DNA of 64,000 nucleotides from Ostrea edulis. Lineage: Eukaryota. Where the stretch lies: assembly GCF_947568905.1 (NCBI RefSeq), contig NC_079171.1, positions 75,702,001 through 75,766,000 on the forward strand, given 5' to 3'. The stretch's first letter is position 1; each line of letters starts with the position of its first letter. The position numbers and the translations under genes are program-made. Below the pieces are notes generated by a model. That model was not told the origin of the DNA. It saw only the letters and a program-made list of their open reading frames with translations, and made no database searches. Below are positions 41,014 through 45,400 of this stretch, piece after piece.

Positions 41014-42004
41014 TCAATCCCAAGGAATCGTAAAAACCGTGACTGGTCTATAGGAAACAGATAGAAATATCATGTATGATTAGCGTAATATTGAATACAA
41101 TTTGTCAATATCGACAGAGTTAATGTTATTTGATGTTTAAAAACAACATTTCTTATTAATAAATAATGCAGCAATTAGGGTGGATGTTGTCTATTGAAAT
41201 GGACATCACCTTTGAAGTTATTTTTATACTTCCTAGGCGTTGGGAGATGGAGTCCTCCAATTTCATTCTGAAAATGTAATACATTTTTCGCATGTACACC
41301 TACCACAATTTCATTATGTCGAAAGTGTTAAAAAATTCCGATATTTAAAGTAAAGATCGTTGATCATGGTTGATGCCATCAGGTGTGTAGTTGAAACTGC
41401 TGAATTCATTGAACACACGATCAAGTACCTAGAATGTACAAGCACCCCCTGTCTTACTAGGGGCTCTATGTTATCTTCACTTTTTCAAGAACCACATCAA
41501 ACAAAAACCGTCGACATGACATATTGTTGTCTGCTTATAATATCAGAATAATAGTCATAACAATTTACATTTTATCGATTTTAATTCAGATTGTTGAAAC
41601 TTTTGTAATATAAAGTTATCAAAATATATTGATTGGCCAGTAACCTCTCACAAAAATCAGGTGTTAGTCTGCTGATAACATGTTATCCATTTATGATATA
41701 TGAAGCAGATAAAGAAGTCTAAGTGGCATCAACGCTGAATATGAATGGAAATGAGAATTATTGATACATTAACTGTCGTTGATATATATAATGCTAAGGT
41801 AAAGGTCACATCATTTTGAATCACGTTCACAAATGTATTCAAACTAAATCTCATTAACTTGAAGTGAAAATAGAACAAAGTATTACGTTTAAATCTGGCA
41901 GCAGTATCAGATCATATTTAGCATGTAGCCTATATAGGCCTCTGATTAAGTACGACTTACTACATACATAAAAGTATGTAAAATTATACGGTACCAATTT
42001 TGAT

Positions 42005-42048
42005 GCACCAGATGCGCATTTCGACAAATAATGTCTCTTCAGTGATGC
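42005..42048 (-). ncRNA. Type I hammerhead ribozyme, fully intact
   Basis: Minus strand: GCATCA CTGAAGA GACA ttatt TGTC GAAA TGCGCA TC/TGGTGC. All core nucleotides present; stem I 6 bp, stem II 4 bp, palindromic stem III (ATGCGCAT); AUC cleavage triplet. Confidence 0.9.
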
Positions 42049-42363
42049 TCAACCGAAATGTTTGAAATCCGAAATAACTATGAAGTTTTAGAGCTAAATA
42101 TAGCCAAAAAACAGCGTGCCAAAAAGTGGAGCCAAATTCGTCCAAGGATAAGAGCTATGCATGAGGGAGATAATCCTTAATTTTGAAATTAATTTCTAAA
42201 TTTTATAACAGCAATTAAATATACATCCGTATTTTCAAGCTAGTAATGAAGTACTTAGCTACTTAGCTACTTGACTGTAGAGACCCTCGGGGACTAACAG
42301 TCCACCAGCAGAGGCCTCGACCCAGGGGTCATAATGTAAAACTTACACGGTACCAATTTTGAT

Positions 42364-42407
42364 GCACCAGATGCACATTTCGAGAAATGATGTCTCTTCA
42401 GTGATGC
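42364..42407 (-). ncRNA. Type I hammerhead ribozyme, core intact
   Basis: Minus strand: gcatca ctgaaga gaca tcatt tctc gaaa tgtgca tc tggtgc. Confidence 0.85.
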
Positions 42408-45400
42408 TCAACCGAAATGTTTGAAATCCGAAATAACTATGAAGTTTTAGAGCTAAATATAGCCAAAAACAGCGTGCCAAAAAAGTGGAGCCACATTCGT
42501 CCAAGGATAAGAGCTATGCGTGAGGGAGATAATCCTTAATTTTGAAATGCATTTCTAAATTTTATAACAGCAATTAAATATACATCCGTATTTTCAAGCT
42601 AGTAACGAAGTACTTAGTATATGATGTATTATTTTGTTTTGGTGTATTTTTAAGGGAATGTTTATTTTGATATTACATTTTATAATTCTGACAAGGATTC
42701 GGCTTCGATATTATCCTAAATACTGTTGATCAATGGTTGCCAGGGATGCTTACCCTCCTAGGCATATTTTTTTCTTCACCTGTGGTATGTCCAAGAGTCC
42801 GTGTTCTCCAAACTATCAATTTTGTATTGCTTATATGAGTTTTGAGATTGATCACTGCTCGTTATCATCTTCTTTCATATGCAACAAATGATGAAGTTAT
42901 CACTGTTGTACCTTTTAACAAAACCATTGAAAGTGACACAACCGGCTGTTTTAATGAAGTTAACAGGCAAAGAAATATGTACATTTCAAAAGAGACGTGA
43001 TCTAATATTAAAATGTGGCTGAATGCTTAGGTATATTAGCTAATTATTAAATAGCTATGCATACATGTAAGGTAAACATTTCAGGATCCTCCATAACGTT
43101 AAAGTTCACAATGGCAGATCAACGTCATCTACAAGTTATATAGTTATAATACAGGGAATACTTACTCCTCCTCGGCACCTGATCCCCCCTCTGGTTTTTC
43201 CAGGAGTCCGTATTTGCCCAACTATCTATTTTGTATTGTTTATAGGAGTTATGCGATTGATCATTCGTCGTTATCTACTCCTTTCATTCGAAAGACTTTT
43301 GACTCTCAATTGTTATACCACAAGCTGGTGACCAAAACATAGTTACCAACTTTTAGTGTCAAACGATTGGGGATCGAACACGTTTTTTTATGAATACGTC
43401 ATTGGATCAAAATTATTGCAGGGTATTGTATTGTAGATATACAATGTTAATAACGATATACACATACTAGGTTTATCAAAAGAAACCGTGTGCCATATTT
43501 CCGATTTCATATATATTTTGAAAGTCAATAACAATCATGGTTCAAAATATGTCCACAATTTTTACAAAGTATAACTATATCTAGGGCTTAACATTTTTTT
43601 TTATGATAGAGGAACTCAAGATTGAATGAACTTGAAGTTGTGGTCCATATAATTCAGTATAGGTAGGGGTGGATGTTTATAAAGAAATTGACGTTCGTTG
43701 AAAATATGCAACAATACCAATTTATCGATTCATTTACACACCGTACATCTCCAAGGGCGAAAACCTAGAAGTACAAATGCTAAACGATATATCACAAAGA
43801 AGTGCAGGAATACTCATTCACATCAAAATAGTATCCACAATGTTTCAGGCATTGAGTTTGTAACATGCGAAATAATTGCATTATTTGTCAACCATAAGTT
43901 GGGCAGTTTAATAGTAGACAACACACACAATTGTATACGACTTGCCATTGGGTTAGATCTTGTCTGGTGTATCAATATGAATTGTTAGACAATTCTTTGC
44001 ACGCTGATTTGGACGTCGGATCAACCCGCTTATTTTATTAAAAGAAAAAGATTGGTTCAGGTGTGACCAGTCGTCATGATATGCTTACTCCTCCTAGTCA
44101 CCTGGTGTGTCGAAGAATCCGTGTTTGCAAACTCTAGTGTTTATTCCTTGTAGTAGTTATGAGATACATCAAGATCATTATGTTGACCTTTTCATTGCAC
44201 AATTCAAACACACGTAGCACAGCCTGCAATCTATTTTAGCAATACATTATAGCTTAAGATTAAGCGTACTTACTATTCAAGGAACAGGGAAAACAAATTC
44301 AAGAGAGCGCAACACAAGTAGCCCTCATGAAAACACCACAAATACACTAAAGTCCGAATGAATTCAATATAATTGCCATAGCACTACAATCCGTATTTAA
44401 TTCCACGGGTAAGAAATCAATGTTACAATATGTCGGGTATGTTTCAGTTGAACGCCCTGAAACTATCAAACATATCATATCACAATCATTCAGACACTGT
44501 GCGCGTATTTCAAGGTCATGGCAATATCATATTTCTGTCCAGGTTTAATTGATTTATCCGCAAACATTACAACAAAAAGGTGACTATCAGTACATATATT
44601 GCATAAAGAGTTCCATTCTGTTGTGAGAGATAAATGTTCGGTATTAATACTCGTCATTATTGATCCGCAATTACACCAAATGAATAACCTAAATAGATAC
44701 AGGAAGGGAAGCAGCTCACTTTAACACCATACTCTGTAATTTTTCCACAAGTCACAGTTAAATTTGCGAATCTCTAAACGACTATTTAAATCATGGCACA
44801 GAGTGCATGGATAGTTTAGAATTCGCGATGCATAATTGCAGTACACGACACCAGTTTTATACACCCCACCGTGGAAAGATCATGGCAGCAAAATCCACGG
44901 AGATCTACTGTCTTGGACGACGTGTGCTATTTGCCAGTACACACAGCTTCCACGGGCGTCAACGTTTCTATCACCGCTTTGCAGAATATGTGAAATGTGC
45001 CACCGACTAAACAATCATGATCAAATGGAATTAAAAAAAATAATATCGATCTAATCAAATAAACTTAATTCAATATAGCAATCAAAGTAATATCGATGAT
45101 TAATAAGTTGGAATTAATCTATTACATATATCAATACAAACAAAAATGTATCCATCAAATTATATAAATTTATATATCATGAATTAATCACATTTGACCG
45201 AAACTTATATTCAAGCTGGATAATTAAATGATCTTAGTATAACAAGTAGAGTCCATGAACTATTCCGGGAATTTTTGCCACAATAGAATAAATTACGGTT
45301 AGATAGTCCTCATATTTGAACTTAAAATACGTGTTTAACTTCTTGCGAAGCGTGAGCAAGATATCCAATTGACCTGCACGATGTAAGATCTGGTCTAAAA

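What the first reader, a model, noticed from the sequence alone, without database searches (positions are those of the whole stretch)
41976..42617. ORF-less ~355-bp tandem repeat is a hammerhead-ribozyme retrozyme
Seen in the sequence: the minus strand at 42048-42005 folds as a complete minimal type I hammerhead. It has stem I GCATCA/TGGTGC, core CTGAAGA, stem II GACA/TGTC, GAAA, a short stem III, and an AUC cleavage triplet. A second copy lies 359 nt away. The same unit occurs at 8 loci (5677, 6470, 13805, 15031, 30351, 32396, 41976, 57446), with nine full-length motif copies in total. Established knowledge: tandem few-hundred-nt non-coding repeats delimited by type I hammerheads define metazoan non-LTR retrozymes, which produce monomeric and circular RNAs. 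Inference: this family makes a ~350-360-nt self-cleaved, probably circular RNA and has retrotransposed repeatedly into this LRR locus. Whether this particular family is already described cannot be checked here.
Basis: partly seen in the sequence, partly recalled or inferred. Interest (0 to 1): 0.92.

Follow-up and report, generated by a model that had tools for sequence, protein, structure and literature searches.

The report
Oyster hammerhead retrozyme repeat family
This is one 637-bp copy of a small non-coding mobile repeat carrying a self-cutting hammerhead RNA motif; the repeat has over 10,000 copies in this oyster-like genome and belongs to a class (animal retrozymes) described in 2020.

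Summary
On the minus strand, 42048-42005 is a complete type I hammerhead. A second, slightly damaged one lies 359 nt upstream at 42407-42364. The same unit occurs at 8 loci in the window.

Rfam's Hammerhead_1 model aligns end to end at 31.2 bits. That is just under its 34-bit cut-off, and it only appears when a short stretch is searched.

Helix III (AUGCGCAU) is a palindrome that cannot close on its own. It forms 8 base pairs in a two-ribozyme dimer, the usual animal design.

Genome-wide there are 8,534 intact cores and 10,640 copies of the 3' end motif.

Copies share a fixed 3' end about 36 nt past the cut site and have variable 5' truncation. About 80% of loci carry a single 3'-end motif. 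Paralogous empty sites define this insertion as 41979-42615, with a 5-6 bp target duplication.

This fits a non-LTR retrozyme: a known kind, and a family not found in the papers I could search. Self-cleavage and circular RNA remain inferred.

One addition: 147 retrozyme insertions sit at one single position in the 3' UTR of a Naiad-type Penelope-like element. This links the two element types.

The scan had already flagged this family elsewhere in this genome.

The parts
41979..42615 (-). The retrozyme insertion (637 bp, about 1.8 units). It comprises unit positions 112-359, then a full unit 1-359, then a 3' tail of positions 1 to about 33.
   Evidence: Unit blast. Paralogous empty sites L048, L049, L050 and L054 join window ~41976/41978 directly to 42616.
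41973..41978 (.). Target-site duplication, left copy (AGTATG)
   Evidence: Four to six bases of the empty-site paralogs align to both flanks.
42616..42621 (.). Target-site duplication, right copy (AGTATA)
42005..42048 (-). Downstream type I hammerhead, fully canonical and identical to the commonest genomic form. Predicted cleavage is between 42011 and 42010.
   Evidence: Sequence. RF00163 31.2 bits, E 1.1e-6, model 1-45/45. Descriptor scan gives 6/6 and 4/4 helix pairs.
42364..42407 (-). Upstream hammerhead with an intact core, a C.C mismatch in helix II and helix III AUGUGCAU. Predicted cleavage is between 42370 and 42369.
42011..42369 (-). The 359-nt monomer between the two predicted cleavage sites. 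It is the candidate excised RNA. Most family copies have a unit of about 351 nt.
   Evidence: Within blastn coverage it differs from the majority base at 5 positions, plus one majority gap.
41979..42010 (-). 3' tail: the first ~33-36 nt of the unit repeated after the last cleavage site. This is the family's fixed 3' end (...GUUUUACAU).
   Evidence: The 3' end lies at unit position 34-43 in about 85% of 54 de-duplicated copies. The tail motif has 10,640 genomic matches.
42370..42615 (-). 5'-truncated upstream unit (positions 112-359)
5677..6002 (+). Older copy (about 84% identity), positions 60-359 plus tail. Its hammerhead core is mutated (CUGGAGA).
6492..6671 (-). Internal fragment (positions 22-217) with no hammerhead
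13805..14092 (+). Old copy, positions 113-359 plus tail. Its hammerhead carries an internal deletion.
15031..15184 (+). 5'-truncated copy, positions 242-359 plus tail. The core is intact and the helices are weakened.
30351..30760 (+). Copy starting inside a hammerhead, followed by a full unit and a tail
32395..33133 (-). 2.1-unit array (TRF period 350) that starts at or near the cleavage site. It is the subject of another finding of this scan.
57442..57633 (+). Young 5'-truncated copy (96% identity), positions 204-359 plus tail. GAAA is mutated to AAAA.
39560..41014 (+). Context, not part of the retrozyme: a decayed, 5'-truncated copy of a Naiad-type Penelope-like element (RT motifs FQQSVGIPMD... 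and FRYIDD). Its 3' end is at about 41014.
42743..42878 (+). Context: a fragment holding the last ~135 nt of the same Penelope-like element
   Evidence: RNA-library contigs also cover it.

Best explanation
The locus is one insertion of a non-autonomous, non-coding retroelement of the animal 'non-LTR retrozyme' kind.

Shown:
- The unit is about 351-359 nt and carries a type I hammerhead with all catalytic core nucleotides.
- The family has more than 10,000 dispersed copies.
- Copies share a fixed 3' end about 36 nt downstream of the predicted cut site and are truncated at variable 5' positions. This is the signature of reverse transcription primed at the chromosomal target from a defined 3' start.
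- This copy was inserted with a 5-6 bp target duplication.

Inferred:
- Transcripts holding two hammerheads pair through the palindromic helix III (AUGCGCAU), forming a double hammerhead. They cut after C17 at both sites and release a unit-length RNA with 5'-OH and 2',3'-cyclic phosphate ends.
- A host ligase would close that RNA into a circle of about 351-359 nt.
- Every complete copy spans the cut site and ends 36 nt beyond it. The template for reverse transcription must therefore be an uncut or re-ligated (circular or multimeric) RNA, not the cut linear monomer.
- The enzyme most likely comes from a Penelope-like element. Here the candidate is the very abundant Naiad-type element, whose 3' UTR holds a strong retrozyme insertion hot spot.
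For: Ribozyme:
- Sequence.
- RF00163 aligns full length at 31.2 bits, E 1.1e-6.
- 8,534 exact cores against 0 in the control.
- ViennaRNA rejects helix III in a single motif. Cofolding two copies gives the double hammerhead with an 8-bp helix III, -27.3 kcal/mol. This is the design described for most animal type I hammerheads (PMC4209133).

Repeat:
- TRF period 350.
- Two tandem hammerheads 359 nt apart.
- GC 38%.
- Copies of 0.1 to 3.1 units.

Mobility:
- The 3' end lies at unit position 34-43 in about 85% of 54 de-duplicated copies, while 5' ends range from 1 to 338.
- The tail motif has 10,640 matches.
- Paralogous empty sites and a 5-6 bp duplication at this locus.

Link to Penelope-like elements:
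- 147 junctions of the retrozyme tail to the last 46 nt of the RT element, against 0 in the control.
- In 14 sampled loci the retrozyme's 5' start differs, while its 3' junction in the host element is identical. These are therefore independent insertions into one site.
- 21,389 unoccupied sites give a random expectation below one.
[quoted passage not shown] That is the Naiad layout of PMC8557442.

Class description: PMC7229834 reports 350-390-bp repeats and about 5,000 hammerheads in mussel, expressed as circular RNA.

RNA libraries: they hold contigs of the unit that cross the cut site and do not cover the single-copy flanks.
Against: - No cleavage or circle was observed. All runs were contigs, and DNA carry-over from a 10,000-copy repeat would look the same.
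- The Rfam score is below the curated cut-off (31.2 against 34), and whole-window scans missed the motif.
- The monomer does not fold better than shuffled sequence, either linear (z -0.2) or circular (z -0.3). The 'highly self-paired' trait of published retrozyme circles is therefore not evident.
- The hammerhead is not clearly more conserved among copies than the rest of the unit: 2.2% against 7.1% divergence, but 13% of 44-nt windows are as low.
- Target duplications are not systematic: 3 of 42 copies have 6 bp or more, against 0.6 in the control.
- About 80% of loci carry a single 3'-end motif, and most sampled copies have one hammerhead. Such copies could not cut as cis dimers.
- The upstream hammerhead of this locus is damaged, and the insertion predates duplications that are 5-7% diverged. 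This particular copy may therefore be inactive.
- The retrozyme unit shares no sequence with the Naiad-type element beyond a terminal CAT. The hot spot shows target preference, not whose enzyme acted.
Confidence: 0.82

Rival explanations
1. The units are not a separate non-autonomous family. They would be solo or partial pseudo-LTRs of an autonomous, hammerhead-bearing Penelope-like element whose coding copies I did not sample.
For: Penelope-like elements carry type I hammerheads in their pseudo-LTRs. They insert as partial tandems with 5'-truncated upstream copies and often have a 30-40-bp terminal 'tail' (PMC8557442, PMC4209133). The 36-nt tail and the partial tandems here look the same. In Xenopus, retrozymes are related to such pseudo-LTRs (10.64898/2026.07.22.740005).
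Against: In 54 de-duplicated copies, successive hammerheads are about 351 nt apart (one pair was 174 nt apart) and no ORF lies between them. The only RT element found nearby is the Naiad type. It shares no sequence with the unit and sits near retrozyme copies about as often as chance predicts (5 of about 55 loci).
Confidence: 0.07
2. The hammerhead is a catalytically dead relic. The family would then be an ordinary short retroposon or satellite that spreads as a linear transcript and by unequal crossing-over, without self-cleavage or circles.
For: The Rfam score is under the cut-off. Helix III cannot form in one motif. Related minimal motifs cleave poorly in vitro (PMC4209133). No extra conservation of the motif among copies was shown. 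Most loci have a single hammerhead. One paralog has lost exactly one unit, as recombination would do (L053).
Against: All core positions are intact in 8,534 copies. The palindromic helix III gives a clean dimer fold. The closest described relatives, in mussel, self-cleave and accumulate as circles (PMC7229834). Copies longer than their likely source (up to 3.1 units) are easier to get from a circular or multimeric template.
Confidence: 0.07
3. It is an endogenised copy of, or a template for, an autonomously replicating viroid-like or deltavirus-like circular RNA.
For: It has a small size and a hammerhead, and the sequence is present in RNA libraries including environmental ones.
Against: There are over 10,000 chromosomal copies with retroposon-type ends. 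No second ribozyme reached threshold on either strand of the window. There is no ORF. The environmental runs are marine or mollusc samples that can contain oyster nucleic acid.
Confidence: 0.01

Closest known systems
Metazoan non-LTR retrozymes, especially the Mytilus galloprovincialis family (Cervera & de la Pena 2020, PMC7229834)
   Same: Both have a type I hammerhead in a non-coding, low-GC repeat (350-390 bp in mussel). Both have thousands of copies, occur as single copies up to short tandems, and occur in a bivalve host alongside Penelope-like elements.
   Different: The family sequence is different, and it was not found in the papers I could search. Here the ends are defined: a fixed 3' end 36 nt past the cut site and variable 5' truncation, with about 80% of loci carrying a single 3'-end motif. 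Cleavage and circles have been shown for mussel but not here.
Newt/salamander satellite 2 and other canonical animal type I hammerheads that act as dimers (Forster et al. 1988, as summarised in PMC4209133 and PMC7229834)
   Same: 6-bp helix I, 4-bp helix II, and a very short palindromic helix III that only becomes stable when two motifs pair.
   Different: Here the palindrome is 8 nt (AUGCGCAU), giving 3 potential pairs around a 2-nt loop. The loop nucleotides for tertiary contacts were not assessed.
Penelope-like element pseudo-LTRs with hammerheads and a 30-40-bp 'tail' (PMC8557442, PMC4209133)
   Same: Partial tandem structure, a 5'-truncated upstream copy, a hammerhead near the 3' end, and a 36-nt terminal extension.
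   Different: There is no RT/endonuclease ORF between the repeats, and the unit is only about 351 nt.
Naiad-type Penelope-like elements of oysters (PMC8557442)
   Same: [quoted passage not shown] It has more than 21,000 3' ends in the genome. Naiads are reported to prefer (TA)n targets, and retrozyme 3' flanks are mildly TA-rich.
   Different: Naiads are reported to lack canonical hammerheads. The retrozyme shares no sequence with this one beyond a terminal CAT.
Plant LTR retrozymes (PMC4918200)
   Same: Non-autonomous, bounded by hammerheads, and proposed to move through a circular RNA intermediate.
   Different: Plant retrozymes have type III hammerheads, real LTRs, PBS/PPT sites, 4-bp duplications and Gypsy-type mobilisation.

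Membership tests
Metazoan non-LTR retrozyme | Type I hammerhead with the conserved catalytic core | tested here: met
   Sequence; RF00163 full-length alignment, E 1.1e-6; descriptor scan
Metazoan non-LTR retrozyme | Short (150-450 bp) head-to-tail repeats, from dimers to multimers | tested here: met
   Hammerheads 359 nt apart at this locus. TRF period 350 at 32395-33130. Arrays of up to 3.1 units elsewhere. About 19% of loci have two or more units.
Metazoan non-LTR retrozyme | Non-coding, low GC (<50%), no LTR | tested here: met
   GC 38%. The only ORF of 35 aa or more found in the scanned 3' part of the insertion is 57 aa and runs out into the flank. PBS/PPT sites were not specifically searched.
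Metazoan non-LTR retrozyme | Dispersed mobile copies, with target duplications larger than 4 bp when present | tested here: met
   10,640 tail motifs genome-wide. A 5-6 bp duplication and empty paralogous sites at this locus. Duplications are not systematic across 42 other copies.
Metazoan non-LTR retrozyme | Self-cleavage of the transcript at the hammerhead | not testable with these tools
   Only the fold is available: a dimer with an 8-bp helix III.
Metazoan non-LTR retrozyme | Accumulates as a small circular RNA | tested here: inconclusive
   RNA-library contigs hold the unit and cross the cut site. Contigs show neither ends nor circles, and the tandem DNA has the same junction.
Metazoan non-LTR retrozyme | Co-exists with Penelope-like elements | tested here: met
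   A Naiad-type element is abundant and was classified through its relatives.
Rfam RF00163 Hammerhead_1 | Score at or above the gathering threshold (34 bits) | tested here: not met
   31.2 bits. There was no hit in the whole-window or 801-nt searches. The genome-wide family search scored only 73 of 85,583 candidates and is uninformative.
Penelope-like element (autonomous) | RT plus GIY-YIG ORF between the hammerhead-bearing repeats | tested here: not met
   No ORF lies between hammerheads in 54 sampled copies.
Satellite DNA | Long homogeneous tandem arrays as the main form | tested here: not met
   The largest sampled array is 3.1 units, and most loci hold less than one unit.
Viroid-like / deltavirus-like replicon | RNA-only replicon with ribozymes in both polarities | tested here: not met
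   There are thousands of chromosomal copies and no other ribozyme family at threshold in the window.

The most novel reading that the evidence does not exclude
The retrozyme is mobilised by the hammerhead-less Naiad-type Penelope-like element. Reverse transcription would start at a defined internal site 36 nt past the ribozyme cut, on an uncut or circular template. The element's endonuclease would aim insertions at a TA-containing motif, and one instance of that motif lies 46 nt from the Naiad's own 3' end. That would explain the 147 independent insertions at this single position, a hot spot more than 500-fold over chance. If so, it would be sequence-level evidence naming a retrozyme's partner in an invertebrate. 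It would also show that hammerhead elements parasitise a Penelope-like clade that has no hammerhead of its own.
Probability: 0.3. Interest if true: 0.6.

Novelty: new member of a known kind. Interest (0 to 1): 0.4.

Why it matters
Retrozymes are the main source of hammerhead ribozymes in animal genomes and of abundant small circular RNAs in some invertebrates. How they are copied back into DNA is not settled.

This oyster family is large and young enough to read the mechanism from its ends: 95-96% identity among the best copies, 8,534 intact ribozyme cores.
- It has a fixed 3' start 36 nt beyond the cut site.
- It shows LINE-like 5' truncation.
- It has a sharp insertion hot spot inside a Naiad-type Penelope-like element.

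These features give testable predictions about the template (uncut or circular RNA) and the partner enzyme. For genome annotation, the family explains eight unannotated repeats in this window and more than 10,000 in the genome.

Tried and rejected
- Rfam scans of the whole window and of 801 nt gave nothing. This was a filter artefact, because a 76-nt scan finds the motif.
- The genome-wide RF00163 search scored only 73 of 85,583 candidates and says nothing.
- The phage collection search was blank and irrelevant.
- Linear and circular folds of the monomer are no better than shuffles. I make no claim of a rod-like structure.
- I first read the 'skips 643' joints in run X19 as a polymorphic empty allele. 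I rejected that reading because paralogous segmental duplicates on the same chromosome lack the insertion and explain those contigs.
- I first read the retrozyme-tail plus Naiad-tail junction as a SINE-like subfamily that had captured its partner's 3' end, or as template switching. I rejected that because Naiad sequence also lies upstream of the retrozyme piece and the retrozyme 5' starts differ. These are insertions into a Naiad site.
- The nearness of Naiad copies to retrozyme copies (5 of about 55 loci) is what chance predicts for so abundant an element.
- The retrozyme unit shows no similarity to the neighbouring Naiad copy.
- The apparent extra conservation of the hammerhead was partly an alignment-edge effect. 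After correction it is not exceptional.
- Microhomology at the 3' junction is modest.
- Twelve ORFs of 110 aa or more in the window gave no Pfam hit. One 65-aa ORF gave a sub-threshold LRR_8 hit.
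Full report
**Observation.** On the minus strand, 42048..42005 reads GCAUCA CUGAAGA GACA-uuauu-UGUC GAAA UGCGCA UC|UGGUGC. It has a 6-bp helix I, a 4-bp helix II closed by a 5-nt loop, every conserved core nucleotide, and C17 before the predicted cut between 42011 and 42010.

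A second motif lies at 42407..42364, with its cut between 42370 and 42369. The monomer between the two cuts is therefore 359 nt. This upstream motif has a C.C mismatch in helix II, and its helix III reads AUGUGCAU.

The motif occurs eight times at full length and once with a deletion. Only 42048-42005 is fully canonical.

A core pattern matched 3 times in the window against 0 in 100 shuffles. It matched 8,534 times in the 894.8-Mb genome against 0 for the reversed control.

**Covariance model.**
- The whole window at gathering threshold gave nothing.
- 801 nt at E<=10 gave nothing relevant.
- On 76 nt, RF00163 Hammerhead_1 aligns over its full length (1-45/45) at 31.2 bits, E 1.1e-6, against a curated cut-off of 34.

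The two blanks are losses in the speed filters. The motif is a real but slightly sub-threshold match. The genome-wide family search scored only 73 of 85,583 candidates and is uninformative.

**Ribozyme architecture.** After GAA, helix III reads AUGCGCAU and is a perfect palindrome.
- In one motif it would be 3 pairs around a 2-nt loop, which ViennaRNA treats as impossible.
- Two copies cofold into a double hammerhead, with both helices I and II and an 8-bp intermolecular helix III, at -27.3 kcal/mol.

This is the layout described for most animal type I hammerheads: 6-bp helix I, 4-bp helix II, and a short palindromic helix III, active as dimers when two copies are close (PMC4209133). Catalysis itself was not and cannot be tested here.

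**Family anatomy.** The genome search found 2,525 first-look candidates. The 40 that were scored include many copies 94-96% identical to the window unit over a unit of about 351 nt.

I fetched 61 loci, removed segmental duplicates and obtained 54 independent copies.
- The 3' end lies at unit position 34-43 (...GUUUUACAU) in about 85% of them.
- The 5' end ranges from 1 to 338, with mild clusters near 200 and 302-326.
- Lengths run from 50 nt to 3.1 units.

The tail motif CCGTATAAGTTTTACAT occurs 10,640 times. Among its first 100 places, about 19% of loci hold two or more motifs at about 351-nt spacing, and the rest hold one.

A fixed 3' end with variable 5' truncation is the mark of target-primed reverse transcription. 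Complete copies always span the cut site and stop 36 nt beyond it. The template must therefore be uncut or re-ligated RNA (inference).

The 36-nt extension resembles the 30-40-bp 'tail' described for Penelope-like elements (PMC8557442).

Two flank features were weak or modest:
- Target duplications are not systematic. Three of 42 copies have 6 bp or more, against 0.6 in the shuffled pairing.
- Microhomology between the 3' flank and unit positions 37 onward is modest. TATA/ATAT occurs in the first 12 flank bases in 28% of copies against a 13% background, p = 0.006.

**This insertion.** The surrounding segment is one of at least 12 segmental duplicates on the same chromosome, 92-95% identical, at C8 66.6-75.7 Mb.
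- Seven paralogs carry the insertion. One of them has exactly one unit fewer.
- Four paralogs lack it and join window ~41976/41978 directly to 42616, with 4-6 bases aligning to both sides.

This sets the insertion at 41979-42615 (637 bp), with an AGTAT(G/A) duplication. It also shows that the insertion arose between rounds of duplication, so it is not recent.

The same result explains the 'skips 643' contigs in run X19. I do not count those contigs as an allelic polymorphism.

**RNA.** Seven of the listed runs are on record as RNA and hold part of the unit. Laid on 41700-42900, contigs of a mollusc RNA-Seq run and of a marine metatranscriptome cover the unit, cross the cut site and leave the single-copy flanks empty.

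Contigs cannot show ends, strand or circles. The tandem DNA has the same junction. Another high-copy repeat at 42807-42888 is covered too. Expression is therefore plausible, and circularity is untested.

The monomer does not fold better than shuffles, either linear or circular.

Divergence among copies is 2.2% in the hammerhead against 7.1% elsewhere. After removing alignment-edge bias, 13% of 44-nt windows are as low, so no special constraint is shown.

**Link to Penelope-like elements.** A decayed RT element lies at 39560-41014 on the plus strand, with motifs FQQSVGIPMD and FRYIDD.
- Better copies hit RVT_1 below threshold.
- Relatives 43-45% identical over the RT core are about 1,000 aa long, with a GIY-YIG domain at residues 118-204 and the RT near the C-terminus.

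This is the Naiad layout reported to dominate bivalve genomes and to lack canonical hammerheads (PMC8557442).

The unit shares no sequence with this element beyond a terminal CAT. Simple proximity between the two is at chance level.

However, the junction 'retrozyme tail + last 46 nt of the Naiad element' occurs 147 times against 0 in the control, on all large contigs. In 14 sampled loci the structure is as follows:
- Naiad sequence lies on both sides of the retrozyme piece.
- The retrozyme 5' start differs from locus to locus (from position 1 to position 318).
- The right junction is identical (ACAT|TATAGGAG).
- The left junction varies by a few bases. It shows a TATAG duplication in two loci and small deletions in three.

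These are therefore many independent insertions into one position of the Naiad 3' UTR. With 21,389 unoccupied sites and 10,640 tails in 895 Mb, fewer than one such insertion is expected by chance.

This shows a strong target preference. It is consistent with, but does not prove, mobilisation by the Naiad enzyme, which is reported to prefer (TA)n targets.

**Comparison and novelty.** The closest known kind is the metazoan non-LTR retrozyme (PMC7229834). The mussel family has 350-390-bp repeats, about 5,000 hammerheads and circular RNAs reaching a high share of total RNA. A 2026 preprint argues that vertebrate retrozymes derive from Penelope-like pseudo-LTRs (10.64898/2026.07.22.740005).

I found no paper describing an oyster retrozyme. 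One protein hit is named Ostrea edulis. The host is evidently an oyster, though I did not establish the species.

The verdict is a new member of a known kind. Its end structure is unusually clear, and the Naiad hot spot is a possibly new observation.

The scan had already noted this family at other places of this genome and at 32396-33130 of this window. I tested those notes' claims about the fixed 3' end and the palindromic helix III myself. I could not confirm the claim that the 3' termini of the retrozyme and the Naiad element look alike beyond 3-4 bases.

Noticed in passing
window 39560-42900; paralogs L044-L054 on the same contig (C8 66.6-75.7 Mb): This part of the window belongs to a family of at least 12 segmental duplicates, 92-95% identical and all in the same orientation on one chromosome arm. 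The retrozyme insertion is present in seven and absent in four. One paralog (L053) has lost exactly one repeat unit.
   Followed up: partly
L075-L088 (for example L076:1086-1557); genome-wide patterns: A single position 46 nt from the 3' end of a Naiad-type Penelope-like element (GCTT|ATAGGAG) holds 147 independent retrozyme insertions, against 21,389 unoccupied sites.
   Followed up: yes
window 39560-41014 (+), 39022-39383 (+), 42743-42878 (+): Decayed, 5'-truncated copies of a Naiad-type Penelope-like element with a fixed 3' end (...CACCTTGCAT). The element gave 17,469 first-look candidates in the genome. Its terminal piece at 42807-42888 is also covered by RNA-library contigs.
   Followed up: partly
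L026:1463-1859 (genome C1:471731-471936): A retrozyme variant with two hammerheads only 174 nt apart. In unit positions it reads 177-359, 1-144, then 320-359 and the tail. This is an internal deletion or recombinant form.
   Followed up: no
L013-L042, first 2 Mb of contig C1: Several 3-kb loci are 94-99% identical over their whole length (L018/L023, L019/L022, L032/L033/L035, L021/L024). The start of this contig is therefore rich in recent segmental duplications, which inflate raw repeat counts.
   Followed up: partly
window 23233-23825 and 19681-19830: A 62-bp tandem repeat of 9.6 copies at 94% match, and a 43-bp repeat of 3.5 copies. Neither is related to the retrozyme.
   Followed up: no
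window 31104-31301 (+): This is the only protein-domain signal found near the finding: a 65-aa ORF with a sub-threshold LRR_8 hit (E 0.0012, 19 bits against a cut-off of 27).
   Followed up: partly
window 41900-42700 and 1-64000 (Rfam searches): The Rfam search tool missed a 31-bit hammerhead when given 64 kb, and also when given 801 nt at E<=10. It found the motif only in a 76-nt stretch. Blanks from this tool on short ribozymes should not be read as absence.
   Followed up: yes
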